Assembly (NCBI GenBank): GCA_965644315.1
Contig: CBFFRQ010000069.1
Location: 1,116,001 to 1,180,000, forward strand
Direction: 5' to 3'
Source of the DNA: Caecitellus pseudoparvulus
Taxonomy: Eukaryota; Protista; Bigyra: Bicosoecida
Length of the DNA stretch: 64,000 nt
In this document: piece after piece, positions 1 to 64,000 of the stretch
Position numbering within the stretch: position 1 is the stretch's first letter
Layout of the letters: every line of letters begins with the position of its first letter
Program-made: the position numbers and the translations under genes
Notes under the pieces: generated by a model
The model's input: the letters and a program-made list of their open reading frames with translations, nothing else
Databases searched by the model: none
What the model was told of the DNA's origin: nothing

Positions 1-1
1 A

Positions 2-250
2 GGCGCCACCGGCCTGACGTTCAACGGGAACGCGGCAGGTGCATTCAGCCTGACGTTCACGAGCGGAAACTGGAACACCCCCCAGACAGTCACCGTCGCC
101 AGCGCCGACGACAACGTAGACTCGTCAGGCGGCACTGGCTCCTACACTGCCTCTCTCACTGTCAGTGCCAGCTCGGCAGATTCGTTCTACAACTCTGCCA
201 CCATCTCCCCCGGCACTGGCATCACGGCCACCGTCTTTGAAGATGAGAGC
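2..250 (+). other. Calx-beta-like / Ig-like adhesin domain (C-terminal part)
   Basis: Motif LTFTSGNWNTPQTVTVASADD...ITATVFEDE resembles the LTFTxxNWNxPQTVTVxAxDD signature of Calx-beta-like repeats (recognised by eye). Confidence 0.7.
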
Positions 251-30900: not shown

Positions 30901-31394
30901 AATCTGTGAAGATGCACACTTTCATTCTACCTCGCCAGCCCGCTCTGTTGGCGGCTTCCGAAACGCGGGAATCAATTACTCCTCAGCAAGTGCTGCTGGC
31001 CACTGAGAGCGGCTCAGTGATGGCGCTGCCTGCCCCACTGCTGGACCCTCGTCGCCCATTGGCCCCTCCGTCTGCCCACGAGAAAGCAGAGAAGCTGCTC
31101 CAATACGCACCGTTCCTGCCACTGTCCCACGAGGCCTTTGTGACGAAGGATGTGGTTGTGCCGCACATCACCCACCTGATTAGCACACCTACACAGCTGG
31201 AGTCAACGACCCTTGTCGTTGTTTGTGGACTGGACATTTTTGCCGGCAGACACCACCCCGTGAAAGCCTTTGATGTGTTGCCAGAAGATTTTAACGCGCC
31301 CCTTCTCATAGTGCTCATGGTGGCGCTTGCCGTCGGGACCGTGTACTTGCAACGACTGCTCAGGAGCAAGCAGCTGCGTGACAGCTGGAAGTAG
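27965..31394 (+). CDS. EMC1: ER membrane protein complex subunit 1, 3 exons, ~1084 aa
   Basis: Exons 27965-28187, 28292-28506, 28578-31394 (GTAAGT and GTGAGT donors). Signal peptide, then EVGQHEW..HVG and PQQ-like ARTGNLKWR. C-terminal EMC1 motifs DDSVLIRYLSPH, LIDAVSG, LLDPRRP, TQLESTTLVVVCGLDIF..P.KAFDVLPEDFN + TM + W. Confidence 0.93.
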
Positions 31395-31746
31395 CAAGCA
31401 GCCCTTGCAGGCAGGCGAATTCATGTGTGGTTCGCCCAGTGACAGTTTACATGGCCCCGGTCCCTCCCGTGCCGCAGCACCGCTCCACCTTTCCGTTGCC
31501 GCAAAGCCAGATCTCGAGCAAAAACGCAAGTCTAATAAGGCACAGAATTCCTGTGTGACCACCGTTGAAGCAAGCTTTGCTGCAGACACTCTCGAAGTGC
31601 CTGCTCTTTGTTGCGCGTGGTGCAGCTGCTGAAGCAGAGATAGGCTACTGCCGCACGCGTTTGAGGCCATGTGGCGCAGCACACGCTGCCTCGCACTCTG
31701 CGGCACACTGCTCCATTGCGGTCTCTCAATAGCTAAAGGTAGGATA

Positions 31747-43700: not shown

Positions 43701-46700
43701 GCTGGGCATTCTGGCGAGCATGTGCGCTTGCGAGCAGAAGTGTCTAGCGACGCACCAAACACTGATGGAACCTACAAAGTGGCATACCTTCCCACTAAGG
43801 CAGGGACGTTTAAAGTGCACGCATCTTTGCGGCGCTCAGGGGGCCTCTTGGCGACCTACTTCAGAAGCTCCGACTTTTCCAGCCCTGTGCTGGCCGACGC
43901 TGTTGGGAACCTAACCCACTGCCCCCCCAACCTCATTGAATGTGATTCAACTCGTGTGGATTCCGCCGTTGACTTTGATTGGGGGCTGCTGGCTCCCCTG
44001 CCGGACTTCCCCGGCGACTTTTTCAGCGTCAGATGGAGTGGAGATGTCCTCTCACCATACACAGGAGCAATCCGCTTCACAGTCATCGCAGACGATGGAG
44101 CACGACTCATCATCAACGGAAAAGCCATCATTGACCAGTTTGACTTTTCGGAGGATCGCATGGGAGGCACAATTGAACTTGTAGGAGGGCGCATGTACAG
44201 TATTCAGCTGGAAGTCAAGGAAAGCACCGGGCGCGCTTCTGCGAAGCTGGAATGGAGCTACCCGGGTAGAACTTCTCATACTGTCCCAAGTTCGCACCTC
44301 TTCTTCACTCGCCATATCGCACGCTCCCCTTCCACCGTGGTCATCGTCCCAGGCGCAGTTTCTGCGATGGCAACCACCGCGGCTGGACATGGACTGGTTG
44401 GCTCCGTTGCTGGGAGTGTGGCCTCCTTCACGATCACAGCCAGGGACTCCGCCGAGAACGTCAGGTTCAACAGTGGTGCGGATTCTTTCCAAGTAGAAGT
44501 GGTGGGGCAAAGCGATTGGGCCTTGCAAGGGCGCACGAACGATCAAGCAGGAAGCGCTCCGCATAGCGTGCCTGCCCTAGTGCAACCCGTTGACTGGCGA
44601 AGCTTACCTGGCACAGCCAGCATTCAGGCGGGGTCTTCTACGCTATACAGCTCCATTGACTTGACTTCACATGTTCAGCGGGGGGACCGCCTTGTTATTG
44701 GTCAGGAGTTGCACACAGTGTCATTCGAGGGACAGTTTGACTCACGTCAAGTGCCGCTGCAGCGAGCGCTTGGAGGAGACGCCGTATCAAACTTGACTGT
44801 CTTTGCTGCCGGACCTGCAACTGGAACTCACGCTGTGTCTTTCACTCCCACCGTTCGGGGGCAATACTCTGTTTCTGTGCTCAGGCCGGCCGTGCAGGAA
44901 GTGCAGTACTTCAGCATCTCAGCCTCGACGGCAATTCGCGGCACCTTCGCAATTGAAGCAATGGGGAAGAGATCGCTTGCTTTAAACGTGGCATCAACTG
45001 AGTCAAGCCTGATGGCATCGATCTCGGCCATGGGCCCCGCCTTCGCCTCGGTGACAGTGTCAGTGGTTCCTCCAGCGCTGAGTGCAAACATGAGCCTTGC
45101 ATGGTTCGTAACGTTCAGCCCAGAAGATGGCAATGTGGAGCTGCTGAGACTTGACACCCGTGGGTTGGTTGCAAACGATTTGTCGGTGGACATGCGAACC
45201 CTGACCGAAGGTGTCCGCAAGCAGCACATCTCCGGATCCCCCTTCTCCATGACTGTCGTGCCATCTGACAGCAGCGCCGCTATGTCCACTGCATTCGGAA
45301 GCGGGCTCTCCTCAGCCACTGCGGGGAAAGTAGCGAATTTCACCATTCAGTCAAAGGATGAATATGGAAATAATCGGTTGACTGCTCAGGGCCCAGAGGA
45401 CTACGTGATATTTGGCTCGCTGGCCTCCCCGGCGGACTCCAGCGTCGAGGCGCGAAGCAGTGGTTTCAACGCGACCTACCGCCACCTGGATGACGGAAAG
45501 ACGGAAGTCACATATGTAGCGAACGTTACTGGAGACTACATTATCTCCGTTGGTATGGTTGATAGGAAAGCCAAGTACCTGCTTCAAGTACGTTTGCCAA
45601 GGGGCCCACGAAGCACGGGCGAGTTCCTCTTCTCATGGGCCGGGCATGACTCAGTGCCTCTTGCATCTGATGCTGAGGCAGCTGATGTCAGTGAGGCCTT
45701 GTCTCGCATGCCTGGCATTCGAAATGTGGATGTGACTGGTGAGATTCACTCAGACGGGGCGGACTTTGAAATTGCCTTCATCCACGATGCTGCGCTTGAG
45801 CTGGACCTTGTTCTAGCTACTGGTCAGAGTTCACCTTCCGCGGCCATCGTGACCTTGACGAAAGTGCAGCCAATGTCCTTGCGCCACATCAAAACTCAGG
45901 CTCAGCCCATTCTCAACGAAGTGCAGACACTAGTCGTTCAAGGGGAACCTCATGACACCTTCCAACTTATGCGGGCAGGGCAGCGCACTGTCCCGCTTCA
46001 CATCGGGTCTACGAGCCAAGAAGTGCAGGATGCCCTCCACGCACTTTCATCAGTGCACTCCGTTCAAGTGGAGGCACTTCCCCCTGCAGGGAACTCATCA
46101 TCATGGCACGTTACGTTCTTGGCGCAAGCACTGGATGGGAGGCTTACCCACCACACACACCTCGGGCCGCAACCACTCCTCACAGTGCATGCCTCAGAGG
46201 ACAACGTCACCTCGGCCTCATTCAGTGCGCTTGTTCTTCCCACAGCTCAGCGAGGGGCTGCGCCGTTTCTTACTCGCGTACTCCCTTCGAGTCTTGCCGC
46301 TACGATGACGTCGGCGACAGAAGATGCAACACGAGGCTTAACCTCCGGCACCTATAACACCACTGCATCATTCCACATTGAAGAGCGTGATGCGTTCGGT
46401 AATCGCATCTACTCTGACCACGACGTTGAAGTGCAAGTTCTGAGGCTTACGAGGGGCAGCAGCATTGCAGGGTCGCTAGCGTTGCAGCTGTCTGGATTCC
46501 GTACACCCTTCCTCCAGGCTCAAGGTCTCAGCGCCGCAGCTATAGAGGTCGAGCTAGAAGCACTGCCTATAATCGGATCTGTCTCAGTGCTTGAGAGAAA
46601 TTTGTCCACTTCTGTGGTCGAGTTCGCCGTCACCTTCAATAGTGATGCTGGAGATCTGCCACCACTGGCTGTGGAAACGAAAAACTTTGCAACAGGCATG

Positions 46701-49700
46701 TCTGCCGAAATTCTTGCTTGTGAGCGATTCCAACACCAACGAGTAACGCTTTTGGCACCAAGTAACTCAAGCATTGGAGGAGAATTCGCCTTGGTCTGGA
46801 ATGGACACGAGTCCTCGCGGCTAAGTGTCGAGGCGAGCAATGAGGACGTGCGACGTGCTCTGCAGGCACTGCCAGGCGTGCTCTCAGCCCGCGTAGCAAC
46901 ACCACCCGCCTTAGAACTTGGACAAATCCGAAACTGGGACGTCTTTTTCGAGTCGGTCACCTCTCCGCTGTCTCTGCTAGTCCCTGAAGGCCGCTGGCTG
47001 GTCGGGTCAGGGAGCCGAGTGGTCGTCGAGGAGGCATGCCCGGCAGGGCACACTTTCGCCACCACTGCTGGGAGGCTGCCTCCTGCCTTCTACCTTCAAC
47101 TCTCGGGGCCTGAAACTGTGTCAGGTGTCGTGACCCCTGCCGGGGCCGGCATGCACCTTGCACAGTATAAGGTCCCGAGGAGCGGGGACTACAGGATGGA
47201 CGTCTCTCTGCTGACCCCAGGAGGGCTGCTTGGGGAATACTTCAGTAATCGATGGCTGCACGGGGCTGCAGCCATGAAACGGGTGGACAGCCATGTCAAT
47301 TTCTTCTGGAAGACTCTCATCCTTCCAACGGCAGAGGACTTCGTTTCCATTCGGTGGACAGGCTTCATTGTGTTTCCATTCAGTGAACGCTTCACCTTTA
47401 CTGCTCACGTCAATGATGGGTTGAAGCTTTGGATCGGCGACGAAGTAGTGATTGATGCCTTTGACCTTGCATTCAATTCCTCGACTCAAGGAGACTTTGC
47501 GGAAGCTCGAGGCACACTGTCTTTCAAGGCTGTGAAAGACCAGCCCTACCCTGTACAAATCGAGTATCGGGAGAACACTGAAAGCGCAGTGGCAAGACTA
47601 TACTGGCAGAGTTCCTCCCAGCCAAGGGTCCTGGTTCCACCTGCTCACTTGTACTATGCAGCTGAGCCCATCTCAGGTTCCCCATTCACCATTCAATCTG
47701 TGGGTATCGTCCCAAGGCGTCCACAGGGTGTCGAGGTGGAGGTGCTGTCCTCCCAGGGCTTGCGTGTACAGTGGACACCGCCACTGGAAGATGGAGGGTC
47801 TGCCATTTCTCAGTACCAAGTTCAATGGTACACTTCTCAGCCTGAGGTTGAGATTCAAACGCTTGTGCTGTCGGGTGTGTCCGGCAGCGCTGAGGCAAGC
47901 CTCTTCATTGTCAGCTTCCAAGGCTTTCACACTGAAGCAATGGCTGTGGGCAGCCCTTCCAATGCTGTTGAGGAGCAGATAGAACGGATGCCGGGAATTG
48001 GTGATGTCCAAGTTGTGTGTGCAACTCAGGAGCAATGGGGGCAGCTGCCTTGCCCTCAAGACACCGCCGGGCGTGTCGTGTATGAAGTGGCTTTCCTCTC
48101 GTACGTCAGACAAGTCCATGCGGCGCCCCATGGAAACTACGCAACAGCTGATGTACCTAATTTGGAGGTGCAAGGTGCCCTCGGTGTCGGCCAGCATGAG
48201 GTGTGCGTCTCAGGGCACGTGACCGTGGCTTGCAACGCATCGCAGTCGCGTGACGGGGGAGACTATGGGGGCTTTTGCTCCCCAGCTGCAGATAACCCGT
48301 GCGGCATCGTTTCAGCCAGCGACCTGCAAGCCTCTCACAGAAAACTGCAGTACGATATCCAACGCCTGTCACCGGGAGTTGAGTACTACGTGCGGGTATT
48401 GGCGTACAACTCGCAAGGCTGGGGTTTCGCCACAACTGCCAAGACTGAAGTCCCGCGTGATACACCGGAGCCACCACAAAGCCCTTCACTTCGTCTCTTT
48501 GGAGACGAGCCTGATGCTCTCCTTGTCCAGTGGGAAGCCCCCAAGAGCGACCGAGGAGCACCGGTGACACACTTCACAGTGTCTTGGCGGGCCGTGAATG
48601 AGTCAAGCTCACCCTGGCTTGAAGCCACATTGCCTGTTTCCGAAGCAGCATCAGGCATGCAAGGGCCGGACCATTTTTCCTACGTCATCAAGGAGCTACA
48701 GCCTGGATACGAAGTTGGAGTTACGGTTCAAGCCACCAATGCTGTCGGTCGCAGCTCTCGGGCGGCGACCATGCCCCACTCAGCGGTGCCATCTGCACAA
48801 GCAGATGTGATTGAAGCCGGGGGCGTTACAGTTGAAGCGCGCTATGTGGGAGCTGGTGTCTCGGTACATGAGTCCAGCAGCACCCTGCACGTTTCCTGGG
48901 TCCCGCCTCAGGATGCTCGAGGCTCGCAACTTGAGTCATTCAGAGTAACTGCATGCTCTGGTCCAGGAAGGCAGGAGATTCAGTCAGTTGCGATCGAGAA
49001 CTCTGAGGGGGGTTCATTTCAATTGCAGATCTCGTCCGAGACGAGTATTCCTTTGTCGTGGAACGCCACCGCAAAGGAAGTCAGGTCTGCCCTCCTCGGC
49101 TTCAACAGTGTTTCCGACGTTCAAGTTGAACGTGTTGATGTTCTACCTGCACCAGCTACGTCTAGTGGCGGAGTGCGCTGGTATCTCAACTTTGAAGAGG
49201 ACATGGGACAAGTGGCACCTGTGGTTGTGCATGATGAGCACTTAATTGGCTCTGGCCCACCAGGAACCCTCTCAGTGACAGTCCAAGTGGGTCTGACTGT
49301 CCAAGCTTCGGCGACAGCATCGTTGTCACAAGGCGGCCAAGAAATAGTTGTGAATACTGCTGACATGGTGGAAAGGGTGGATGAACTAGACTGGGTGCAG
49401 TACGGGTCAAGTTCGAGCAACACTGCACGAGTGTCGCAAGTTCAAACCGACGGGGCTTTGACACGGCTTCGCCTTGAGAGCAGCCTCGAACCAACGAGTT
49501 CTGGAAGCGGTGCACTACTGGTTGGTCAAACTCCACGTGGGAAGATGTGCGGGGGTCAAACGATGCGCTTCGTTCAGTTCGAGGCCACTCAGCCTCGCTA
49601 CGAGCTGACACTTGAAGATTTGAAGCCTGGAGCTTCCATTGCAGTGTCCGTCAGTACCATGAGCAACAGAGGGCTTTCAAAGAGCAGGCTTGCAACGCCA

Positions 49701-52700
49701 GGTTCCATTGCTCCTCCTTTGCAAGCACCCGATAGGCCACAGTCTGCGATGCTCTCCTCCCCTTCGTCTTCCTCTCTGCAGGTCAGCTTCCGTGCACCCA
49801 CATCAAATGGGGGTTCTCCGATCACTCAGTACATCGTCGAGTGGGACATGAGCTCAAACTTCAGCGGGGGACCACAGGCGAAGCCCTTAGGGCAGCACTC
49901 GATTGAAGTGCAACCAGGAGCTTGTGAAGTCACGCCATGCCGTCATGAGTTTGGCGGGCTAGAGACCGGACAGGAGTATTTCGTTCGGGTGTTTGCTTTC
50001 AACCGTTTCGGGTTCAGCGCTCGGTCTGCATCGCCTGTGCCAGCATCCATGGCGCCGACCACCTTTGCCATGCCGCCGAGTCGCGTTCTGGTGACACCGT
50101 CTGGCTCTGACGCTGTGAATGTGTCCTTTCCTGCTTCCGAGTCCGTGGGGGGGGCCGCGGTGTCCAAGTACAAGATTGAATGGGACGCGCAAGGCCCACC
50201 GCCTGTGCAGACAGAAGCCCTGTACTCCCTCCATGATGTTTTCACGATTGTGATCTCGGGAGCGGAGAACAACTTGGCCGGCTCGTTTCGCCTTGTACTG
50301 GATGGCGCTCGCACCGCTTCATTGGCAGCTGACGCGACACCAGCCGACGTGGCTTCGCAGCTGGAGAGCTTGCCCAGTGCAGGCAGCGTCGCTGTCTCGC
50401 GCCGCCAACTAGCCATGACGTGGGGCTTTGCGTGGGATGTGACGTTCCTTGCGTACAATGCTATGCCGCATGCTTTCACCCTGGAGAGCTCGCTCCGCGG
50501 TTCAAACCTGCACTCTGAGATCAAAAGAACTGTGTCGGCACTAGCAGGTTTTGAGCGACAAGTGGTCGCTTTGGAGAGTGGTGACACTCGCACACTAGTA
50601 GGGTCATTTGCGTTGAGTTTTGAGGGACACCAAACCGTGCTCTTGCCTGTGAACGCCTCTGCAGACCAAGTCCAGCGCGCAATCGATGCACTGGAGACCG
50701 CTGGGGAGGTGCTGGTGCAGTCCAGCACAACCATCACAACCCGCTCATTCACAGTGACGTTCTTAACTAGGCTGGGAAACCTGCCAGAGCTCATTGTTTC
50801 AGTACAGAACTGCTTAGATATGTCAGCAGGCAGTCCACGCCCAACGTTTGAGGTGGCTGAGATCCAGGCAGGGCGTTTGCCATCTATGGCGGGTCCCCTA
50901 CGTGGCTCAACAGAAGTGCATGCCCATACCGATGCACAAGCACCATACTCTGTCGTAATAGACGGGCTAGAAATGGGAATCGGATACCATTTCCGAGTTT
51001 CGGCTTGGAATGGAGTCGGTGACACGTTCGGCAAGTCCCAGTACGCCTCCCCTGCGCTGGTGACTCCTGCCCGCAAGCTCGGGCGCCCGGCAAGCGTTTC
51101 ATCCGAGCACATTTCTGCAGACTCCTTGATGGTCTCATGGCAGAATGCGGCAGGCACTGGTGAGCACCTCATTGATGCGGTAGAGGTGGAGTGGGATACG
51201 TCAACACCTGCCATGGAGCAGCAGCGACTGACTCTCTCTGCAACAGGTCAGCTGACTGGCAGCGTCGACGTGTCGCTCCGGGGAGACAACACTGCAACAG
51301 TCAGCGCGGCATCAAGTGAAGAAGAGGTGAAGCAGGCAATTGAGCAACTTGGGGGAGCAGGGATCGTACGGGTGACGGCATCCCCCGCATACCCCTCTGG
51401 GACGGCGTTTCATGTTCACTTCCTCACAGCCGTTGGAGATCTCCCAGAGCTGCTCGTGGTGAGGAACGGTCTTGAGGGGCTTGATGCCCGCGTAAGTGTC
51501 TTGACCCTTGTGGATGGTGCTGAGCCAGACTTTGACGGAGGGAGTGTTGGTGTTCAAGTCCTCCCTCTCGGACAGGTACTGGTCCCGGCTGAGCCTGAGG
51601 TGCAAATCATCTCTCTGGTATCTGAGGCAAATGACCTGCATGGTGACGTGTTCATAAACTATGCTGGACAAACAGGCGCATTCCCACTTGAACCAATCGA
51701 TACCGCCGAAGATGTCAAGGGCAAGCTGCAAGCGCTGCCCGGAATTGGGACAGTCGAAGTGTCGAAGCGAGTGCTGAACCAAACGACGAGTGTCCCGCGA
51801 CAGCGGCAAGAGGTTTCTTGGGCCGTGACATTTTCTGACGAACCTGGGATCGTCCAGCCACTCATCATGCTGCAGACAGACCCTGCAGCGCAGAAGGGAA
51901 CTGCTGTTGCTGGAGGGCGGGCTGGGAGCAGCCACGGCCTCAAGGGTACTGCAGCCGTCGCGACAGTCAGAAGGGCCACACTGGGTGCCGTCCCTCAAAG
52001 TGTCCACCTCCCTCTTGGACGAAGTGACATGACTTTCTTCGTGCGAGCAAGGTTTTTAGGTTCTCAGGGCCCTGGGCCGTTCAGCACTGCGCGCTTCGGC
52101 TCGAGGTTGGCGCCTGCCCCGCCTCAACCAGTGCAAGACGCGCTGGTGGCGAAGCTGGGACCTTCAAGCGTGGAGATCTCTTGGATGCCATCCCAGATAG
52201 GTACGTCAGCCTCCAGGTACGTGGTGCAGTGGTCTCCTTCAAGTTCTTTCGAGACTGGTGTTCAGGAAGCCAGTGTCTCGGCGAACGACACACTCGCGCA
52301 CGCTTCCGGGCGCTTGGCCACTGCCGTGCGCAATCTGGCATCCACGCCCACCTACTTCCGTGTTCTCGCTGCTTCCAGCATCGGCTACAGTAGACCGACT
52401 CTCGCACACCTTGATCCTTGGCATGCAGCCCAAACGTTTACCCTCTCGCTGACAAGCTCAGTCCCAGAGAATGGCACCTTCCAGCTTGAGGCTGGAGGTG
52501 TTCAGACAGCGCCCATTCCAGCATCATCGTCCGCGCAAGAACTTCAGGGCTTTCTGGCACAATTGCCCTTGGTGCCTTGTGTTTCTGTGCGGCTGCTTGA
52601 CGAGTCGGCTGTGGCGGATCCATTCGCCAACTTCACAACCAAACGGACCTGGACCCTGCACTTCCACTGTCAAGAAAAGAACTCTACGACATCGCTGGCA

Positions 52701-55700
52701 GTCAGCTCATACAACACGTCGATCATGCCGGTCATCGTGCGTGCTTCAGAAGCCGCTCCTGGAAACGTGGTCGACCTCGGTGTGCCTTCGGCGCCTCTCG
52801 CACCTGTTGCTTCGCTGCACGTCGTATCAGGGGAATACCTGGGTGTCATCATTCGACCTGCAGAGAATTTTGGGCAAAGCCCCACAGAAAAGTACATCGT
52901 GGAGTGGGACACAAGTCCCTTCTTTGCAGGCTTGACCTCCCCGGGTGAAGCCGCCTCACGTTCCGAGACCGTGTCAGCCGCGTCGTGCAGGTTGCTGCCC
53001 TTAAGCGACTACTGTGACTGGGACACCGCAACCGGTACTGTCCGCTTCAAGCTCCCCGGGAGTGACTCTCACCCCTTGGTCGAAGGCTCGCAATACTACG
53101 TCCGGGTGCAGGCAGTGGACACTCTCAGCAAACAGTCTGCCCCGACCCTTACTAGCCCCCAGTCCGCGACGCCCCTTCCGCAACTTCCACACACACTGGA
53201 CAGCTTGCACGTCAGCAGGTCGCCAAACTATGTATCCAACCAACTCTTGCTCTCTGTCGCAGCCCCCAGTGTTGACGAGAACGGGTTCAAAGTTCATGCT
53301 GGCGGGAGCGAGGTAGTTGCCTGGCGAGTCGAGCTGGCGGCCAATCCGGACTTTCACGGTTCCCGACAAGTAGACATTCCAAATTACGTCGACGGCACAG
53401 CAAACAGTGTCCAACAGTGCCTGAATGGGGTTCCTTGTCATATGCAACTCGGAGCTGAGGTCCAAGCGGTGGATGTTTCATCACGAGAAGGCAGCTTCAA
53501 TTCGGGCAGCTTTAGACTGTCCGTGCAGGGCAGCTCAACGCCATGCTTGGCTGTGAACTCCTCTGCAGCCTCGGTGCAAGCAAATCTTGACGCTCTACTT
53601 GGCTCAAGTGGGCTTTTTGCTGTTGCATCTGCTGAACTGTCCAACGGGCTGAGAACCCACAGGCGCTTCTTTATTCGTTTTGCTGGAGCAGACGTGAGTG
53701 GGGACCAGCCTCTGCTCCAAGTGAGCTTGGAAGGATGCCAGGCGTTTGCAGCAGGGCCGGGGCTGACTGGCTCTGGATTCGATGTTTCTGTCCAGCGCCT
53801 GATCCCAGGCTCCCTGCTGGAGCAGGGCACTGTGTACCATATTCGTGCCAGGGCCGTCACAGCAGTCGGCGCCGGCGCTCCAGCAGTCGCAACGGGCAGC
53901 CCAATCTACCCGGCGGGCCTTGCCTCCCCACCAGCCGGTCCGGTGACTGTGGAAGCCGTGGTGGACAACAGTCTCGAGCTCTTTGTTCGCTGGGCGGCTC
54001 CAGCAAATCAAGGAGGGGCTTCTTTGTCTGGGTATGTTGTTCGCTGGCGGGCGGCCCCATTAGGATCGCCACAAGGGCCATGGTGCGGCACTGGGAATGA
54101 TACAGACTGTTTGTTTGTTGAGGCGCACTCAACCAGCGCAACGCTGCCCGTGCCAATCGCGGGGGTTCCCTACCAGGTGGCCGTCTTCGCCCGAACTTTC
54201 CGTGGTGACGGAGCTGTCGCACTTGCCACCCCAACATGCCAAGCTGGGTTGGAAGACTGCATTCCTCACGTGCCAGGATTCCCTGACCGCATCGTCTCTC
54301 GAGCTTTGCCTTCACAGCCAATGAACTTCATTGCTGGGGGGCTTCTGTCTCCGAACGCTTTCTCAGCTTCCAGCGTACAGCTGTCGTGGGCCGAGCCAAC
54401 AGACGACGGAGATGCCCCCATCTTGAAGTACAAAGTAGAGTGGGACACGTCTCCAACATTCGATTCCAGTGTGAGTGGTATGCCACTGTCATTTGATTCT
54501 GCGTTGGGCATGTCCCCAGAAATCCTGGGGCCTTTTTCGGCAGGCGAAGTGTTCTACGAGGTGACAAGCCTGCAGCCAGGTGTGACCATGTTCTTCAGAG
54601 TCACAGCTGCAAACAGTCTTGGCTTTGGCGTTGAATCTGCCCTGCAGTCATCCACGCCCTTGGAGCTGCCATCTGTGCCAACAGACGTACTGCTTGTCAC
54701 TCAGCCAGAATCCGAGTCTGCCGAGAAGCAAGGCACGTCCTTGATTGTGCAACTGAGTCAACCTGTGAGCATCGGTGGGTCCTCAATCATTGAGTACTTT
54801 GTCGAGTGGGCCTTGGAGTCTTTTGATGGGGAAACCCCAGACCAACAGGTTGTCAGCATTGACGTGTCTGGAGGTGCAGCTGTCGGTGGTTTCCTGCGCT
54901 GCCGCCTGGACACTTCACCCGCCGCCTGCCCACACTGCCCGGTGCAAGGTGTTTTCGTTTCACCTCGCTTCTCCGTCTCTGCTTCAGCCTCGGAGGTCAA
55001 GCAGGCCATTGAAGTGATGCCGAATACCGGCCAAGTTGCTGTCAGCGGTGGTGTGCCGTCGACGAACGGATCCACCGCATGGGTGATCACTTTCCTGCAC
55101 GTGACAGGTCCGATGCCAAGTCTCACCATAGACACCAGCCACGTAACTTCCAGTACATCGCTGGCAGATGTGACGGTTTCAGTGAATTCCGTAGATCCGC
55201 GACGCGTCCCAGGCAGGACGGTGTCAGGCTACTGTCAAGGGCAGCCTAGCTGCCATCGCGTGGCCCCAGCACCCGAACCGCACAGCCCTACTCAGGTTTC
55301 AATCACTGGTCTTGTCCCAGGTGAAAGGATCTTTGTTCGGGCCACTGCACGCAATGCGCTGGGGCTTGGTCCCACCCAAGTCAGTGCACCAGTCTCCCTG
55401 TCGCCACCACTCCAACCTCCCAGTCCGCCCACCTCGGCCACCAACTTACTCGGCAAACCCACACTGTATAGGCTGGGGTCGAACATGCTTCAAGTGGCGT
55501 ATGGTCCTCCACGGTTTGATGGTGGGGACCCGGTTGTGAAGTATAAAATCGAATGGGATCCGTCTCCATTGTTCGACTCCGGGGGCACAGGCCCGGGTGG
55601 AGAGAGTCGCCCGATCGCATGGGCTGAAGTCCCTGCACCAGCCACCCAAGATGGCGCGCAGTTCTTCACTGTTGCCTTGCCCCCTAATCTGCAAGCAAAC

Positions 55701-58700
55701 GTGCCCGCTGGTGGGGTTCTCATCGCAGGTCATGACACAACTCACCCATCAACTGAACCGCTGCCGTTGCTAGCGGGGACTCTGTACTACGTCCGTGTAT
55801 TTGCATTCAACAGCGAACGTCGATACGGGGAGCCAGCTTTGTCAGATCCCAAGGCGTTGAAAACTTTCAGTGCGCCAGCTGCGCCGGCTGACGTCCAGGT
55901 GTCTGCTGCGTCAGGCACGAGCCTGCGAGTCACTTGGGCAGAACCCAGCGGCAACGGTGATCCTGTCAGCTCCTATGAGGTCGCGACGTACGAGTACAGC
56001 CCTGAAGCTCCCCATTTTGGTCAATCAGAGGTTCAAAGAGTCACCATTGGGGCGAATGGCAGCGCAGTCCCAGATGGATCCTTCACCTTGTCCTTTGGAT
56101 ACGGGCTGGAGGAGACCCTGCCTGGGACAGTCGCTGTCACTAACGTGCAGATCATCTCAAGTACTGGGATACCAGGGTACACCATCAATGGCACCTTCAG
56201 TGTCGCTTTCTCTTCAGTGGCATGCCTTGATTGCGCAGACCGCAGTGTGCAGTCGACGTCAGAGTTGCCCTTCAACGCTGACGCTGCCCAGCTTGAGTCT
56301 GCACTGGAAATGCTGAAGAACCTGGGAGATGTTGCAGTTTCTCGAGTCAGCAGAGATTCAACCTTGCACGGCGTCGGCGCATTCTCCTGGATGATCACCT
56401 TCAGCGCTGATGCCTTCACCTCCGCCACCAGTCCACTCCCAACGCTTGAAGTCACCAGCAGCTTAGGAAGCCCTGGAGCTACTTTTGAGCCCGTGCAGCA
56501 CTTCACAGATGTTGAAACTACACATGACTTGACCCCATATGTCTCCAGATGCGACCGCATCAACATTGGATCCTTCAAGTTTACAGTACATGCTAACGAG
56601 GCGCTTCCTTACACCGCGCGCCACCTGCCACTGGCGGATCCTTCGGACTGCAGCCGCGACAAGCAGTACCCTCGCACAACAATTGAGCAAGTCAAGGCAA
56701 GCATTAGGCCTAGAACTGTGCAGCTCTCACCGTCCAGCTCGGCTGGACACGTCGAAGCTGCTTTGGAAGCGCTGTACAGTGTTGGCGATGTTGCTGTTTC
56801 GCGAACTCTCGCAAATGACAGCGCTTCTGTCCATTTTGACGTGACCTTTTCATCCATGACAAATCCAAACGAGGGGACCATTGGAGAGCATGCTCTGCGT
56901 GACGTTCTACCGCTCCTCCAACTCAACGCACGAGGTATCAGAGGCAGTGGCAATGCGAGCACGTGCACAGTTGAACGCAGAGTCGAGGGGAGAACTCCCA
57001 AGAACTATCGAAGGATGCTTGTTCATCACAACAGCGACTCATTAGTGCAGAGCGCGATTGTTTCCGGTCTTGTGCAAGGCACACCATACTTCGTTTCGGT
57101 CAAGGCTTTCAACAAAGCGGGGCATGGCGCACTGGCGCAACCCTCGCCGCCATCAGCTATTCCTCAGGCCGCGCCTGAGACTGTGGAGGGTGTGCGCCTC
57201 CTTCATAATGATAAATCTTCCGTTCTTGTAGAGTTTGACGAAGTCAAGGAGGACGGTGGATCTGAAGTCCGCGAGTACTTTGTTGAGTGGGACACATCTC
57301 AGACGTTCAACAATGCTGGGTCAGGGTACGGCTTCACCACCACTGTGCTCTCACATGCTCGCCAGCGAGTTACAACTCAATCTCCAGTCGCTCCTATCAC
57401 GGGATCCTTTTCTCTCGCTACTGGAACCTTTGATGGTGCACTGCAAGTGCCTGTAGCAGGAGGGAACATTCGATTCACTCTGACTCCAGGCTCGACGACG
57501 ATCACAGTGTCGCACGGAGGTCCAGATCTTCGTCGTTTTGTAGTACCAGGCGAAGGGATTCGAGTGAACAACGTGGACTACTCCGTCCACGCTTCCATCC
57601 CCATCACCAGTGTGAGCATCCCGCTTGCTGAGCCTGGTGATGCCACGAAGTCTGCCCCATACGCAGGCCCATACCTTGAGGGGCAGCCGGTATTCACCGC
57701 CACGACACGTGTTGGCGCGGTGATAGCAACGAGTGGTTTCGACTCTATACAGACAGTATTCCAGACGGGTTCTGGGAATGAAGCTTATGATGCGTCAGAA
57801 ACTCTGAGCAGAGGTGACCTGATTCGTATTGGCAACCACGGAAGCCAGGTGCAGTACAGGGTGCGCGGAGTGAGGCCGGGTTTTGTAGACCTAGCCCCTG
57901 TGCAGGATACAGGTGCCACCCAAGCAGCCTCCTTTGACAACGACGGGATGAACATGGTTAACGTCCCGATGTACGCCATGGAGAAGACGGTGCCATTGAT
58001 AGCAAACTCTTCATGTGATTCCATTGAAGCTGCCCTGGAGGCTCTCCCAAGCATCCCTGCGGTATCATGTCGGCGGTCCATCATGCAGAATGGCTTCTCC
58101 TGGGATGTGTCAATTGAGGGGGTGTCTAGTTTCTCTAGTTTCGTGCCTAATGAGCTAGACTTGCTGGGAGGTGGCTTGACGGGCGTCGCGCAGGTCAATC
58201 GCGTCTCGATTGGAAAGCATGTCATCGTCGGCTTAGACTCCTCGAAAAGGATCCATGCTCGAGTGTCAGCAGTGAACAATAAGGGCAGGGGTGTCCCTGC
58301 TGTGTCAGCCCCCACCGCTATCATGCCCAGGGACACGGTGCCATCTGAACCCCTGCGGGTGTTGGCCAGGCCAGCATCTGACTCCGAGGTACGAGTAGAA
58401 TGGGACGAGCCTGTATCTGATGGAGGGCAGCAGATCACGAAGTATGAAGTTGAGTGGGACAGAGCAGCTTCCTTTGACTCTGGTGCAAGTGGTCGTCCGT
58501 TGGGGTCCACGTTTGTCCCCGCAAAGGATGCGGCTGGCGCCCCAGACACTCACGTGCTCAGAGTGTCCTGTGACGACGACAGCTTGGGCGGCACCTTCAG
58601 CATTGTGTTGCTCGGGGTTCGCAGTCGACAGCTTCCCCATGACGTTACCTCTCAAGATCTTCAAGAAGCAGTTGCAGAGCTGCCGCTCGTCAGAAGCGTC

Positions 58701-61700
58701 ACTGTTCACCGGAACATTGCCGTTAATGGCTTTGCGTGGAAGCTGTCGATCTCTATCCGGCACACTGAGCAAGACCTTGGCGGAGTGCTGAGCGTGGATG
58801 GGACCGGCTTAACTGGCCTAAACCCAACTGCTGCTCTTGACGCTTTGCACGAAGTGCAGATGTTGCGCTGTGAAGGCGGGGTGGCGGGCGGGATCCGCTT
58901 GTCATTCCGCGGGAACGGAGTAGAAGTCAGCCATTCAGCCACGCCGCACGCCTTGGCAACTGCCCTGCAGACGCTACCACTCCTAGGCAACGTCAAAGTC
59001 ACATCTGCGTTTTCCTCCATATGTGGGGCCCAGGTCAGGCGCACGAGTATCACTTTCATGCAGCAGCAAGGCGATGTGCCCCTCCTCGGCTCTGACACAG
59101 CCGGTGTCAGCCTTGAAGAGGCCCGGAAGGGGCAGCTCCAGTACTCACCAGGACGAAGCCCCTTCGGGTTGACTGTCTCTGGGCTGAATGATACGGAGAG
59201 GTATTACTTTAGGGTTGCGTCGTACAACATCCTAGGCCACGGCAAATTCTCGCTTGCCAAAGCAAGGTGGCATGAGCAGCCAAGCACAGCCCATTCACCT
59301 GCAACTACCTGGCCCGACGCTCCCCGCGGGGCCTTGTTCACACAGGTTGACAGCTCAAGAGCAAACTTGACTGTCCGCCTCCCCCCCTTGACAAGTGGGG
59401 GTGGAGGAATCGCCGCGTACGTCCTCTCTTTGGATCCACAACCGACTTTCACGAGCGCCGCAGATTGTGGGAGCCGTACAGAAAAGCAACTCATCCAAGT
59501 GTCCATGTCTTCACCTCCATCAGGACAAGTTGATCAATTGAAGCTGGAGTTCGCGTTCCATGGATATGTTGTAGAAACCCAGTGCCTCAGCCTGAGCTTG
59601 GACACTTGGACAGGATTCGAGACTGCCCTGGAAAACGAGTTGGCGTCCACGAACCCTTTCGTCACGGTCGATGTAACCATCGTCGGCGATTCTTCTGCAG
59701 AAACGGAGTACGGGAGGTCCATTGTGCTGGAGTTCGCTGAGCACTCCTTGCCATTTGCTGACATTCCTCAAGCACGTGTGGTGACCTGCTCAGGCTCTTT
59801 TTCGGCAAGCTACGTCAGCTCCACCATCCAAGATGGTCGTGGAGACGGTACCAATTCCGTGGGGTCGTGTGAGGCGCAGTTTCTGGCTCCCATCAAGCAA
59901 GAAATCTTCTCAGGCAACTCCTTCGTGGTATCTGGACTTGTTCCTGGCGTCCCGATGTTTGGCAAGCTGCATGCAGTAAACAGTGCGGGGTTGCAAGGAC
60001 CTGCGTTCTACCTGTCGGACCCGTTGGTCTTGAAAGCCCCTCCCTTGCCTCCGGCAGGTGCGGAGGTCACCCCACTCTCGGAACACAGCCTCTTTGTGGA
60101 CGTCACGCCATCCTTGGGGAGCACTAGCTTGGGAAATGAGGGCAGCACCATTCATTCCTACACTGTATTTGCAGCCGGTGCTTCGATCGAGGAGGCCGAG
60201 GTGCAGCACGTAACCGTGGATGTCGATGCTGACACGCTCAGTGCTGGTGAACTGCGCCTTGTAGCCGACGGCTACTACACTGAGTGCCTTCCACTTCCGC
60301 TATCAGGATCAGACGTCGAAGTTGAATTAGCCCTTCTCCCAATGATTAAGCGTGTAGCAGTCGTGGACCAAGCGAACGGCACCCTGCATGTGGAGGTCAC
60401 AGAGAGCGGTGACGTTCCACAGTTGGGCTTCTCAACTGCCGGTTGCCAGCCTGTGTCACCGCCAGGCAGTCTGCAAGGAAAGGAAGTCGTGACAATCAAC
60501 AACGGGTACTCACTACCAAAGCCAACCATCTTACGTGTAGCGACGGAGAGCAGCTTTCCGATCGCCGGAAACGTGAACGTGTTGGGCGGCTTTCATGGAA
60601 CCCTCGATGAACAAGTTTGCCCAGCATGTGCATCTCTTGACCTTGGGGAGGATCCCAGGTTTGTCCTGTTGACGGGATTCCCCCTTGCAATCGCTGAACT
60701 GGCAGTAGGCCAGCGGGTGAGAGTGGATGGCGTGGAGCACACCATCGCGTCCTTGACTGTTCATGAGCAAGGCATCCGTCTATCCACTGCCCAACCCCAC
60801 CCACGCAGTTTCTTTGGAGAGCCACTCTTTGTAGACGAGACTTACGTGGGGATCGGGCGTTTGAACGAAACTGACTCTACGATGCTCCAAACACGTCGCG
60901 ACCTGTCCAGCCGCCTGCGTGGCCCGGGAGCGACCATCAAAGTCGGTGACCATGTTCACACAGTCATGTCCGTTTCAGGGCATGTGGTGATGGTTGCGGA
61001 GCCCATTCTGGGTCAGCGGTCGGCAAACATTCCTTTGTTTGTTCGGGATGAAGTTCAGATTCCCTTCGACGCGACTGAGCAAGTAATCGTTGCTCACATG
61101 GCTCAGCTTGCTGGTGCTGGGCGCGTCAATGTCCAAACCTGGGGCCCTGGGGCCAATGGAGCGATGGTGTGGGAATTGGAAATGCGGAGCACGAGGCCTG
61201 GAGACGCTGTTTCTCCACAGTTGCAAGTGTCTGCTGTGGACGCTGCTGGCGTGGTGACGCTTGAAGCTCCTGCAGGAAGTGGTAATGCCGCTGGCCTTGT
61301 CAGCTGGACCCAGCAGGGGGGAACATGGGGCGAAATTCGACCATCTTCGTCCCTCGCAACAACTCGAAGCGCTGTTGAGGTTCAACGAGTGTCGGTCTTG
61401 ACGCGAGGGTCACTGCCTGCCAGCATGCAGTTTGCTCTGATTGACTGGGACACACCTGCGAACGAGGTGCAGATTGACATCGACTCATCCCCGGAACATG
61501 TGCAGAGCCTACTGCATGAGCACCTTCGAGTGCTTGGCCGAGTGTCAGTGAGCTCTGAGCCACTGCCAGCCGGATTCAATGGGGCGGTGTGGCAAGTGAC
61601 ATTTTCGTCCAACCAAGCGTCGCTGCCCCTCCTCGGCCTCGGTCCGATTCAGTGCCCAGAGGAGGCGGCCCATGTGACATGCCCAGTTGCATCTGACATG

Positions 61701-64000
61701 TCTGAGTTCACTGTGAATAAGGTTCACGTTGGTGCGGCTGCCGGGACGCGGGCCACTTTGTCTGGCTTGTCACAGGGAGAGAGTGCGATTGTTTTCGTCT
61801 CAGCACAATCCTCTGCTGGCACTTCGTCTACGACACTCACCAAGAGCGGCTCGGGCAACGTATTGGCATTGTGGACTGACGTTGGGGAGCAGCCCCCAAG
61901 CGTCAAGAACGTGCAGGTCCGCAGCGTCAGTGCTACTGAAGCAGAGGTGGCGTTCGATGGTGTTGGAGAGGAATTCGACGCTTCGACCTACATTTTGGAG
62001 GTTTCGACAACGGACGGGGTGGAAGAAGTGCAGAGTATCACCGTTGCACACCCAGATGGGGTCTCAGGGACCTTTCAGCTCAAGTTGGCGTCAGAAGTAA
62101 CGGTCCCCCTGCGCCACAATGCCAGTGAGGTTGAAGTAGCTGCAGCCTTGAAGCAGATGAAGGCCATCAGTCGAGCAACCGTGCATCGGCAAAGTCTGGA
62201 CTCAAACCTTGACGGTGCAGTCGACGGGTACAAGTGGATCCTTCGCATGAGGAGCAGTGATGTCCATCAGACGCCCGATCTTCCCGACCTTGTCGTTGTC
62301 AGCAGCTTATCTCCAGCATCAGCGGGAATCAACTCGTGCCCCTCCCAGTGTGTGGATGGCTCGCCACCAGCAGACTACGCAGCTTTGCGGCTGTCGTCAA
62401 GGTCCTCAAATCAGCGCCATGAATGTGCCGCCTTTGCCGATGGACTTTTCTCAGGACCTTGCATGGCAGGAGAAAGCACGGTGTTTACTATCATGTCGTC
62501 AGTCGCTGACGATGATAGAAGCTCGTACGGTGGCTCATTTGTGCTCTCCTACGGCGGAAAAGAAACACGGCTCCTCTCAGCCACTGCCTCCGCAGCAGAC
62601 GTCCAAGCCCAGCTTGCAGACGTGATAGGCACTGACTTTTCCGTTGAAGTCGATCGTTACGAGTACACGCAGACTGGAGCGCCAGAGGTACACCAACAGC
62701 AGTGGGGGATCAAGTGGCACGCGAGGATCACGCCTTCCGGAGCCATTGATGTTGAGGACCTCTCTGTGTTGACCCACTCATTCACTGGTGAAGATGCTGC
62801 AATTGCTGTGTTCAGGAGCATCTTTGTTGAGACATCAACCGCCCGGGGTCCGCTCAATGGCGCGTTCGTGGTCCGTGCACAGCACGAACAAACAGCCCCC
62901 CTGTCTGTTGATGCATCGGCTGAAGCAGTACAAGAAGAAGTGGAGGCGCTGCTGGGTGTCGGAAAGGTCCATGTTGATCGCACTTTAAGCTATCGAGCAA
63001 GTGGGGCACGCGTGGTTGGCAGGCCAGGCGATGGCTTTGTCCGCAGTTCGATGGATGTCTCTTCAAGCGCCTTCCCTGTAAGTCAGGGCTCTCGTTTACT
63101 CATAGCAGGCGATGAATTCTCAGTCTGCCATGATGGTGTTGCAGCGGTGAATCTGGATGCACAGGCAATTCCTCTGTGTGAAGCAGCCAATCCGAACGTG
63201 CAGGCGACGTTCTCGGGCCCAGGAAGCGCCCCACTAGACTTGCTGGTCCACGCAAACGGGTACCAGTGGTGCATCACCCTCATGGTCAGTGTGCACAATG
63301 TGCAGGATTTCTTTGCCATCCCAGGGCCTGGGTTCGCTGGAGTCGGCTCTGTTCTCCGAACTTCAACAGGAGCTGGCCTCCGCCCGTTCACTGTGCACGT
63401 TGGACAGCCTAGCCCAGTGCACACAATCGTGCTGAAGGACCCATTCTTCAACACAGCTACATCTGTAAGCTATCCAGATGTCGGGTTCCGCTTGGAGTTC
63501 GACGGAAGGCAGACAGAGTGCCTGAGGTGGCACAGTGACGACGGGGAAGCGCTGTCAAGCAAGCTGACAGCCGCCATCCAAGACGTTGGCGGAGAACCAC
63601 ACGTGCAAGCTCATGCAGTCAAGCGAGGCTCCGGTCTTGAACCTGACTTTTTTGGCTACACTATCACCGTCTCATACTCCGGAGCTGCAGAGAGTCTAGT
63701 CAGCATCCCCCAGCTATCCGTCACAACTGCAGGGTGCACAGATCCCGCGTACCCTGGAACTGTGCTTGCCGACGAAGCAGTCCTGCACTCAAGGTCCCTC
63801 CCATGGCGCGAGACGTTCTTGTCCCTGGAGCCGGGCCGGGAGTACCAAGTAAGGGTGTCTGCTGAGAACTCCTTCGGCATTGGTGAACCGTCGGACGCTG
63901 TCCACTTCACGACGCCAAACTTGGCCCAGACCCCTGGAGCAGTGCAGGCTGTAAACCTTGTAGATCTTCACACTGGGGACGGGGTGGAGGTCTTCTTTAA
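31747..64000 (+). CDS. Giant secreted/surface multidomain protein (>10,700 aa, 3'-truncated): leader, 5 FN3, ~9 filamin-type Ig domains with 3 PA14 inserts, >=19 FN3, dozens of inserted EVQ-type modules
   Basis: Exon 1 31747-31945 (hydrophobic leader LLMALLAIVHTAA; alternative ATG 31789). Phase-1 intron 31946-32037 (GTATGC..TGCGCAG). Exon 2 begins GPGAPATVDL..PPEDDGGASVTAFKVEWDT. The frame (codon starts divisible by 3) is open after TGA 32001. Hand translation at many points and at the end (..PGAVQAVNLVDLHTGDGVEVFF) stays in that frame, and the ORF track lists no + ORF in it, consistent with no stop. Confidence 0.93.
32038..38065 (+). other. FN3 block 1 (5 FN3 domains, 4 of them split by inserted modules)
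   Basis: N-halves such as PPEDDGGASVTAFKVEWD pair with C-halves YFVRVSAATAAGYG (~33970), YYVRVAT (~35740), YRFRVLAMNSVG (~36055), YQLTARVRNAVG (~37005), YAFKVVPLNAAG (~37990). Confidence 0.85.
40074..40481 (+). other. PA14 domain 1 (inserted in a filamin domain)
   Basis: GGLQASYYDNQW..RTDPVIDFNWG..DYVSARWHGKI..GDEGFRLYFDHELVIDRW..LKVEFRE..IRLQW..IPPTALY. Confidence 0.85.
43839..44306 (+). other. PA14 domain 2 (inserted in a filamin domain), intact DD motif
   Basis: GGLLATYF..RVDSAVDFDWG..DFFSVRWSG..ADDGARLIINGKAIIDQF..IQLEVKE..KLEWS..VPSSHLF. Confidence 0.88.
47220..47657 (+). other. PA14 domain 3 (inserted in a filamin domain)
   Basis: GGLLGEYFSNRW..RVDSHVNFFW..DFVSIRWTGFI..VNDGLKLWIGDEVVIDAF..QIEYRE..RLYWQS..VPPAHLY. 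Confidence 0.85.
47706..64000 (+). other. FN3 block 2 (~19 complete FN3 domains plus the start of another; many split by inserts)
   Basis: Repeated DGG..I..Y.VEWDT N-halves and Y.VRV.A.N..G.G C-halves, e.g. ~48385, 49977, 50985, 55785, 57087, 59202, 63844. Confidence 0.85.

What the first reader, a model, noticed from the sequence alone, without database searches (positions are those of the whole stretch)
55872..57165. Four-level matryoshka domain insertion: FN3 > EVQ module > beta-barrel-like insert > EVQ module
Seen, in order: FN3 N-half (LRVTWAEPSGNGDPVSSYEV); module A start (EVQRVT..GSFTLSFG, 56028); insert start (LPGTVAVT, 56118); a complete module B (NVQIIS..GTFSVAF..ELPFNADAAQLESALEML..WMITF..LPTL, ~56142-56500); the rest of the insert (VETTHDLTPYVSRCDRINIG..LPLA, ~56511-56700); the rest of module A (RTVQL..VEAALEALYSVGDVAVSR..FDVTF, ~56712-56990); FN3 C-half (GLVQGTPYFVSVKAFNKAGHG). 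Established: domain insertion is much rarer than tandem fusion, and deep recursion is rarer still. There are no introns here, so present-day exon structure does not explain it.
Basis: partly seen in the sequence, partly recalled or inferred. Interest (0 to 1): 0.85.

Follow-up and report, generated by a model that had tools for sequence, protein, structure and literature searches.

The report
Four protein domains nested like dolls
Inside a giant secreted protein of a small marine eukaryote, one common FN3 domain is interrupted by a second domain, which is interrupted by a third, which is interrupted by a fourth; the nesting is real and conserved, but nesting as deep or deeper is already known elsewhere.

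Summary
Window 55872-57165 lies in one stop-free frame of 15,358 codons.

It reads, in order:
- FN3 N-half
- module A strands 1-2
- 12 residues of a small insert domain
- a complete module B
- the rest of the insert
- the rest of module A
- FN3 C-half

**Profile tests.** Profiles were built without this segment. For all three host families the two pieces cover complementary profile positions in bracket order. Each rejoined pair scores as one full-length domain.

**Homologues.**
- Twelve homologues from other organisms carry the insert uninterrupted. This places module B exactly in its first hairpin turn.
- Eight metagenomic homologues (28-45% identity) keep the four-level order.

**Structure prediction.**
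- AlphaFold closes the split FN3 (Z about 11, 2.2 A).
- Module B alone folds as a compact domain (pLDDT 95).
- Three-dimensional closure of module A and the insert is only indirectly supported.

**What is new and what is not.**
- The "EVQ module" has no Pfam family. It is homologous to repeats of the mycobacteriophage Bxb1 tail-tip cage protein gp23 (E 8e-32), which also parse as nested.
- Deep nesting is not unprecedented: a six-level case is known in cyanobacterial RNA polymerase.
- This scan had already followed up nesting elsewhere in the same protein.

The parts
32004..63998 (+). In-window part of the giant stop-free frame (15,358 codons in the genome) that holds the finding. It has 14 intact FN3 domains, at least 14 split FN3 domains, 62 module cores, and filamin and PA14 domains.
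55872..56027 (+). FN3 N-half (strands A, B, C), segment residues 1-52. Level 1 host, first piece.
   Evidence: Pfam fn3 positions 2-38 of 84. Own FN3 profile positions 2-40, 32.2 bits. The model superposes on solved FN3 domains.
56028..56105 (+). Module A N-part (EVQ strand and GSF strand), residues 53-78. Level 2 host, first piece.
   Evidence: Module profile positions 2-23. Conserved in homologues. Strands E53-61 and E71-75 in the model.
56106..56141 (+). Insert domain N-part (LEETLPGTVAVT, first strand), residues 79-90. Level 3 host, first piece.
   Evidence: Insert profile positions 3-12. The LPGTV motif is identical to the consensus of 12 uninterrupted foreign copies.
56142..56504 (+). 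Module B, complete and contiguous, residues 91-211. Level 4, innermost.
   Evidence: Module profile positions 3-91. AlphaFold alone gives pLDDT 95.3 and pTM 0.87. Fold match to Bxb1 gp23 at Z 11.4 and to the Bxb1 capsid C-domain at Z 10.0.
56505..56705 (+). Insert domain C-part (DLTPYVSRCDRINIG...LPLADPSDC...), residues 212-278. Level 3 host, second piece.
   Evidence: Insert profile positions 13-63, 47.6 bits in the uncut segment. Cys226 and Cys260 are conserved in all four-level homologues.
56706..56987 (+). Module A C-part (helix, strands 3-5), residues 279-372. Level 2 host, second piece.
   Evidence: Module profile positions 26-98. 53-residue core hit at protein residues 8237-8284.
56988..57164 (+). 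FN3 C-half (strands C', E, F, G), residues 373-431. Level 1 host, second piece.
   Evidence: Own FN3 profile positions 68-96, 20.3 bits. The model's range 1..424 aligns to single FN3 domains, about 90 residues at about 2.2 A.

Best explanation
The segment is a true four-level nested domain insertion inside one giant, probably secreted, modular protein.

**Path of the chain**
- It starts an FN3 sandwich (strands A-C) and leaves it at the C-C' loop.
- It lays down the first two strands of an alpha/beta 'EVQ' module (A) and leaves it.
- It lays down the first strand of a roughly 60-residue insert domain and leaves that at its first hairpin turn.
- It builds a whole second EVQ module (B).
- It then returns and completes the insert, module A and the FN3 in that order.

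**Why it can fold (inferred).** Each guest domain has its two ends side by side, so it can sit in a hairpin or loop of its host without breaking the host's fold. The result would be a side arm of three domains standing on an FN3 of the protein's backbone. In other words, it is a branched domain tree made from an unbranched chain.

**History (inferred).** The arrangement arose by stepwise in-frame insertions. A widespread three-level cassette (FN3 > module > insert) came first. Module B was added once, in the common ancestor of this protein and its four-level homologues.

**What is shown**
- the sequence order
- the profile complementarity
- uninterrupted relatives for each host
- conservation of the order
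- predicted closure of the FN3
- autonomy of module B

**What is inferred**
- closure of module A and the insert in 3D
- secretion
- the scaffold or display role
For: **Rejoining tests**
- FN3: 53.0 bits over positions 2-96 of 98, against 32.2 and 20.3 for the halves.
- Module A: 61.5 bits against 43.5 for the C-part; shuffled N-parts give about 43.
- Insert: 59.3 bits against 52.7.

**Split points in the uncut segment**
- Module positions 2-23 | 26-98.
- Insert positions 3-12 | 13-63, with exactly module B between.

**Homologues**
- 12 foreign homologues have FN3-N > EVQ..GGTFTLAFG > LPGTV.V..G.dy..T..DLTP..RGD.I.I... > module core, with the insert unbroken.
- Paralogous three-level units lie in the same protein at residues 8391-8760 and 9510-9735.
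- A colinear orthologue has 45% identity over 431 residues. Seven more homologues are colinear. All come from marine metagenomes.

**Structure prediction**
- AlphaFold model of the segment: pLDDT 71.7.
- About 90 residues spread over 1..424 superpose on single solved FN3 domains at Z about 11 and 2.2 A.
- Residues 50..375 align to Bxb1 gp23 267..610, 161 residues, Z 11.5.
- Module B alone: pLDDT 95.3.

**Context in the same protein**
- At least 14 paired split FN3 domains, each holding 1-9 modules.
- A signal-peptide-like mini-exon with a GT donor lies upstream.
- FN3, filamin and PA14 domains and conserved Cys pairs fit an extracellular protein.
Against: - No coordinates or contact map could be read. 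Contact between the two pieces of module A, and between the two pieces of the insert, was therefore not seen directly.
- Those regions have pLDDT of only about 60-80, and pTM is 0.49.
- The alignment used for folding had only 9 sequences.
- The gain from the 9-residue insert piece is small: +6.6 bits, against +3 for the best of 10 shuffles.
- Profiles cannot tell which N-part belongs to which C-part, because chimeras score alike.
- Expression, secretion and function are untested.
Confidence: 0.8

Rival explanations
1. Tandem rather than nested. On this reading the first EVQ..GSF piece is a decayed remnant. The second module is contiguous: it starts at EPVQHFT, uses GSFKFTV as its second strand, and merely has a long loop. 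That would give only a two-level insertion (FN3 holding two modules side by side).
For: EPVQHFT and GSFKFTV look like the module's strand motifs.
Against: - The module profile does not extend over that stretch. The alignment stays at positions 26-98 and scores 41.3 bits, no better than the C-part alone.
- The stretch instead matches the insert family at 47.6 bits and aligns with 12 uninterrupted inserts.
- EPVQHF is the last strand of module B in the pLDDT-95 model.
- The 'remnant' is conserved in homologues.
Confidence: 0.07
2. Complementation in trans. On this reading the orphan N-part and C-part pieces do not pair within one chain. They pair with pieces of other molecules or of distant units, as in donor-strand exchange, and so polymerise the protein into fibres.
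For: - The protein holds many strand-less modules and clustered spare strands.
- The module profile weakly matches proteins of tubular flagellar hairs, PDB 9UFE, E 0.008.
Against: - The pieces always occur in equal numbers and in bracket order.
- AlphaFold closes the FN3 within the chain.
- The same nested order is seen in a phage protein whose structure is solved as a folded chain.
Confidence: 0.07
3. The 'insert' is not a domain. On this reading it is a long, structured linker, so the nest has three levels of true domains.
For: - It has only about 60-75 residues.
- No significant match to any solved structure or Pfam family; the best are E 0.06-0.07.
Against: - It is a conserved family with invariant G, D and GD positions across 13 copies.
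- It scores 59 bits when rejoined.
- The model predicts five strands there.
- A Cys pair is conserved in it.
Confidence: 0.04

Closest known systems
Mycobacteriophage Bxb1 tail tip cage protein gp23 (PDB 9D93), and the C-terminal domain of the Bxb1 major capsid protein gp14 (PDB 9D9W)
   Same: - Same module family. The profile of the eukaryotic modules hits gp23 at E 8e-32. A profile built only from this protein scores 109.5 bits.
- Fold match of module B to gp23 391..522: Z 11.4, 99 residues, 2.5 A. Fold match to gp14 308..396: Z 10.0.
- gp23 also parses as nested: N-parts at 269-324 and 330-385, a full module from 390, then C-parts at 514-565 and 565-599.
   Different: - It is a phage virion protein, not a eukaryotic giant protein.
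- The host of the nest is another module, not an FN3.
- The entry point is the hairpin between strands 3 and 4, not after strand 2.
- There is no 60-residue insert domain.
- I could not inspect the solved chain or read the paper, so the nesting in gp23 is inferred from sequence.
SI3 region of cyanobacterial RNA polymerase beta' (RpoC2): recursive insertion of sandwich-barrel hybrid motifs
   Same: Recursive A1-B1-C-B2-A2 nesting in one chain, reported as six levels deep. One family serves as both host and guest (PMC13114784).
   Different: - Cytoplasmic enzyme in a bacterium.
- Unrelated folds.
- One nest per protein, not a dozen or more on a repetitive backbone.
Bacterial flagellin (D0-D1-D2-D3) and the cap protein FliD
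   Same: A hairpin-like chain path in which outer domains are made of N- and C-terminal pieces and the tip domain is contiguous (own knowledge). These chains appear among the weak fold matches.
   Different: Different folds. The outer flagellin domains are helical bundles formed on polymerisation. There is no sequence relation.
Insulin receptor / IGF1R second FN3 domain with its insert domain
   Same: An FN3 interrupted by a long insert. Solved chains align about 86 residues spread over about 207 chain residues to the split FN3 of the model. Placement in the C-C' loop is from my own knowledge.
   Different: The receptor's insert is largely unstructured and is cleaved. It holds no folded guest domains and no further nesting.
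Tubular mastigoneme (flagellar hair) proteins, PDB 9UFE
   Same: A full-length but weak profile match of the module: E 0.008 over profile positions 3-99. They are extracellular filament proteins of a protist.
   Different: The match is marginal, was not confirmed by a fold search, and no nesting is known. It is only a lead to a possible role.

Membership tests
Fibronectin type III domain (Pfam PF00041) | Match to the family profile above Pfam's gathering score | tested here: met
   74 bits against a cut-off of 25 for the 1000-residue piece around the segment, as two stretches. The N stretch covers profile positions 2-38. The rejoined halves give one full-length match to a profile of 12 intact FN3 domains of the same protein.
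Fibronectin type III domain (Pfam PF00041) | Seven-strand beta sandwich superposable on solved FN3 domains | tested here: met
   In the predicted model, 83-93 residues spread over 1..424 align to dozens of solved FN3 domains at Z 9.5-11.3 and rmsd 1.8-2.7 A. This is a prediction, not a solved structure.
Module family of Bxb1 gp23 / gp14 C-domain (unnamed; here 'EVQ module') | Significant profile-to-sequence match | tested here: met
   E 8.3e-32 against PDB chain 9d93_Ma. 109.5 bits with a profile made only from this protein. gp14 is weaker, at E 0.05.
Module family of Bxb1 gp23 / gp14 C-domain (unnamed; here 'EVQ module') | Same fold | tested here: met
   The module B model (pLDDT 95.3) scores Z 11.4, 10.0 and 8.8 against Bxb1 gp23, Bxb1 capsid protein and phage Patience. 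The next best match is 5.7.
Module family of Bxb1 gp23 / gp14 C-domain (unnamed; here 'EVQ module') | A curated family entry exists to file it under | tested here: not met
   No Pfam or NCBIfam family matches the modules or gp23. The only hit is a weak PHROG tail-sheath match for a canonical module, E 1.2e-5.
Nested domain insertion (A1-B1-C1-D-C2-B2-A2) | The two pieces of each host cover complementary parts of its family profile, in bracket order | tested here: met
   FN3 positions 2-40 | 68-96. Module positions 2-23 | 26-98. Insert positions 3-12 | 13-63.
Nested domain insertion (A1-B1-C1-D-C2-B2-A2) | Uninterrupted relatives of each host exist | tested here: met
   - 12-14 intact FN3 domains.
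- 16 contiguous modules in the same protein.
- 12 unbroken inserts in other organisms, and one in this protein at residues 4199-4259.
Nested domain insertion (A1-B1-C1-D-C2-B2-A2) | The two pieces of each host are in contact and form one fold in 3D | tested here: inconclusive
   Met for FN3 in the model. For module A and the insert there is only indirect support: the alignment of 50..375 to gp23, and the secondary structure. Coordinates could not be read, and excised constructs could not be folded.
Tubular mastigoneme proteins | Significant sequence or fold match | tested here: inconclusive
   Profile E 0.008-1.4 to three chains of 9UFE. They are absent from the fold-search lists.

The most novel reading that the evidence does not exclude
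The EVQ module, and perhaps the small insert too, may be a self-nesting 'guest' domain family that spreads by inserting copies of itself into hairpin turns of existing domains. On this reading it is shared between tailed phages and marine protists through gene transfer. Giant branched surface proteins of protists would then have been built from a phage decoration domain by a recurrent, possibly directed, DNA-level insertion process rather than by rare accidents.
Probability: 0.12. Interest if true: 0.85.

Novelty: new variant of a known kind. Interest (0 to 1): 0.6.

Why it matters
- **A natural test case for folding.** Here a common, well-behaved domain (FN3) tolerates a 320-residue, three-domain guest in one loop. 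It does so at least 14 times along one chain. This is relevant to protein folding, structure prediction and the design of branched display scaffolds.
- **Domain annotation.** Standard scans see only half-domains here and miss the module altogether.
- **A phage-to-eukaryote link.** The tie between an unnamed eukaryotic module and a structurally solved phage tail-tip protein gives the module a first experimental anchor. It also raises a testable question about exchange of domains between phages and eukaryotes.

Tried and rejected
- **Iterative search for the insert inside the protein alone** found only two copies. A regular-expression scan and foreign homologues were needed instead.
- **Foldseek** was uninformative on the whole model and on module B. 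VIA-align gave the useful matches.
- **tblastn of one module against the phage collection** found nothing.
- **The Bxb1 structure paper** is not in the library, so I do not know what the authors call the domain or whether they noted nesting.
- **The tandem parse through EPVQHFT/GSFKFTV** was rejected.
- **Search for DNA repeats or duplication scars at the junctions** gave only short chance matches.
- **Test of whether module B is a copy of module A.** Their cores are 34% identical, against a mean of 24% among all cores, but they are not each other's nearest paralogues. The origin of B is therefore unresolved.
- **The organism** was not identified.
- **The upstream mini-exon** was not joined to the large frame in any search.

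Full report
**1. Where it lies**

The segment translates without a stop. It is residues 7957-8387 of a frame that opens at window 32004 and runs 15,358 codons, beyond the window end. The genome is 30.6 Mb in 215 contigs.

Upstream features:
- An unrelated EMC1 gene lies just upstream, at 28533-31391.
- A short open stretch at 31669-31738 reads like a signal peptide and ends at a GT donor. The giant frame is therefore probably the main exon of a secreted protein.

Pfam sees FN3, filamin and PA14 domains along the frame. Around the segment it sees an FN3 N-half (profile positions 2-38) and, some 330 residues later, an FN3 C-half.

**2. The repeat families**

- **Module core.** A 53-residue core (ASA..AL..L..G.V.V.R...W.VTF) was built by iteration from module B. 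It occurs 42 times in the window part and 62 times in the whole protein.
- **Full module.** Sixteen contiguous copies define a 104-position module: EVQ strand, G.F.L.F strand, helix, two strands, GD.P.L, last strand. In nearly all copies the G.F.L.F strand touches the core. For the core at 8237 it does not.
- **FN3.** An FN3 profile finds 14 intact domains and at least 14 clean N-part/C-part pairs. These enclose 114 to 1727 residues and 1 to 9 module cores each. A split FN3 is therefore the rule in this protein, and the segment is one of many.

**3.

All profiles were made with the segment masked.

| Host | Rejoined | Pieces alone | Controls |
|---|---|---|---|
| FN3 | 53.0 bits, one domain, positions 2-96 of 98 | N 32.2, C 20.3 | N-half plus shuffled C-half 29-34 |
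| Module A | 61.5 bits, positions 2-99 of 104 | C-part 43.5 | shuffled N-parts about 43 |
| Insert | 59.3 bits, full length | C-part 52.7 | ten shuffles 52.0-55.9 |

Further detail on each host:
- **Module.** The uncut segment shows an orphan N-part (53-76, positions 2-23), a full module (92-200) and an orphan C-part (281-367, positions 26-98). The tandem reading through EPVQHFT/GSFKFTV gains nothing.
- **Insert.** The profile was built from 12 foreign uninterrupted copies. It hits 82-91 (positions 3-12) and 210-262 (positions 13-63). Exactly module B lies between.

**4. Relatives**

A search of 1.8 billion representatives gave 397 hits.
- One is colinear over all 431 residues at 45% identity. 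Seven more are colinear over the parts they cover. Their sources are marine metagenomes.
- Twelve other homologues show the three-level cassette with the insert unbroken: LPGTV.V..G.dy..T..DLTP..RGD.I.I. This pins module B to the first hairpin turn.
- The same protein has three-level units at residues 8391-8760 and 9510-9735.
- The four-level group replaces RGD by RCD and gains a second conserved Cys (C226, C260). This may be a disulfide that steadies the interrupted insert; that reading is inference.

**5. Structure**

- **Segment model.** AlphaFold on the segment with the nine-sequence alignment gave pLDDT 71.7 and pTM 0.49.
- **FN3 closure.** About 90 residues spread over 1..424 superpose on single solved FN3 domains (Z about 11, 2.2 A).
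- **Module B in the segment model.** Residues 91..211 match the C-domain of the Bxb1 capsid protein (Z 9.6).
- **Modules A and B together.** Residues 50..375 align to Bxb1 gp23 267..610 (161 residues, Z 11.5).
- **Module B alone.** It folds at pLDDT 95.3. Its only strong fold matches are mycobacteriophage proteins (Z 11.4, 10.0, 8.8), and the next best is 5.7.
- **Stalk between insert and module B.** Strands 87-98 and 209-216 run unbroken from the insert into module B and back. This suggests a two-stranded stalk; that reading is inference.

**6. What the module is**

- The module profile matches Bxb1 tail tip cage protein gp23 at E 8e-32.
- gp23 itself parses as two N-parts, one full module and two C-parts. 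That is a three-deep self-nest entered at a different hairpin.
- Neither the modules nor gp23 match any Pfam or NCBIfam family.
- A weak match to tubular mastigoneme proteins (E 0.008) hints at extracellular filaments.
- The insert has only sub-threshold hints to a phage head-tail attachment barrel.

**7. Comparison and verdict**

- Domain insertion is common: about 20% of multidomain proteins.
- Nests of six levels are described in cyanobacterial RNA polymerase (PMC13114784).
- Flagellin is a classic four-level hairpin nest (own knowledge).

The principle is therefore known. The new points are:
- the families involved
- the FN3 host used again and again
- a module that acts as both host and guest
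- the tie to a phage protein

An earlier follow-up in this scan (s1-641859) had already reported nested units in another part of the same protein. The present case adds a mixed, four-level example that passes explicit tests.

Noticed in passing
window 32295-62360 (modules) and L004:10928-12982 (Bxb1 gp23): The unnamed eukaryotic module is homologous to repeats of mycobacteriophage Bxb1 tail tip cage protein gp23 and to the C-terminal domain of its capsid protein. gp23 itself parses as three modules nested in one another.
   Followed up: partly
window 31669-31738, donor at 31739: A short ATG-started stretch (MWRSTRCLALCGTLLHCGLSIAKG) looks like a signal peptide and ends at a GT splice donor. 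It is probably exon 1 of the giant gene. A second donor-like site lies just before 32004.
   Followed up: no
window 28533-31391 (+): A separate gene for ER membrane protein complex subunit 1 (EMC1_C, E 9e-52) lies directly upstream of the giant gene.
   Followed up: no
window 2-18802 (+): A second giant stop-free frame of more than 6,267 codons runs off the window start. It has ephrin-receptor-like cysteine-rich repeats and none of the EVQ modules.
   Followed up: no
giant protein residues 60-620, 8391-8760, 11080-11180, 12970-13060, 13896-13990 (partly beyond the window, L001/L003): Guests enter the module at three or more different places: after strand 1 (clusters of spare EVQ strands), after strand 2 (this finding), and in the hairpin between strands 3 and 4 (as in phage gp23).
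   Followed up: partly
window 56545-56553 and 56649-56651 (Cys226, Cys260 of the segment): Homologues with an unbroken insert have RGD. All four-level homologues have RCD plus a second conserved Cys 34 residues on. This may be a disulfide gained together with module B.
   Followed up: no
giant protein residues 11646-13470 (beyond the window, L001/L003): One FN3 is split by 1,727 residues that hold nine module cores.
   Followed up: no
window 44598-44780 (protein residues 4199-4259): The only unbroken, high-scoring copy of the 60-residue insert domain in this protein (48.3 bits). It lies next to a module downstream of filamin/PA14 domains, not inside an FN3 that I could detect.
   Followed up: no
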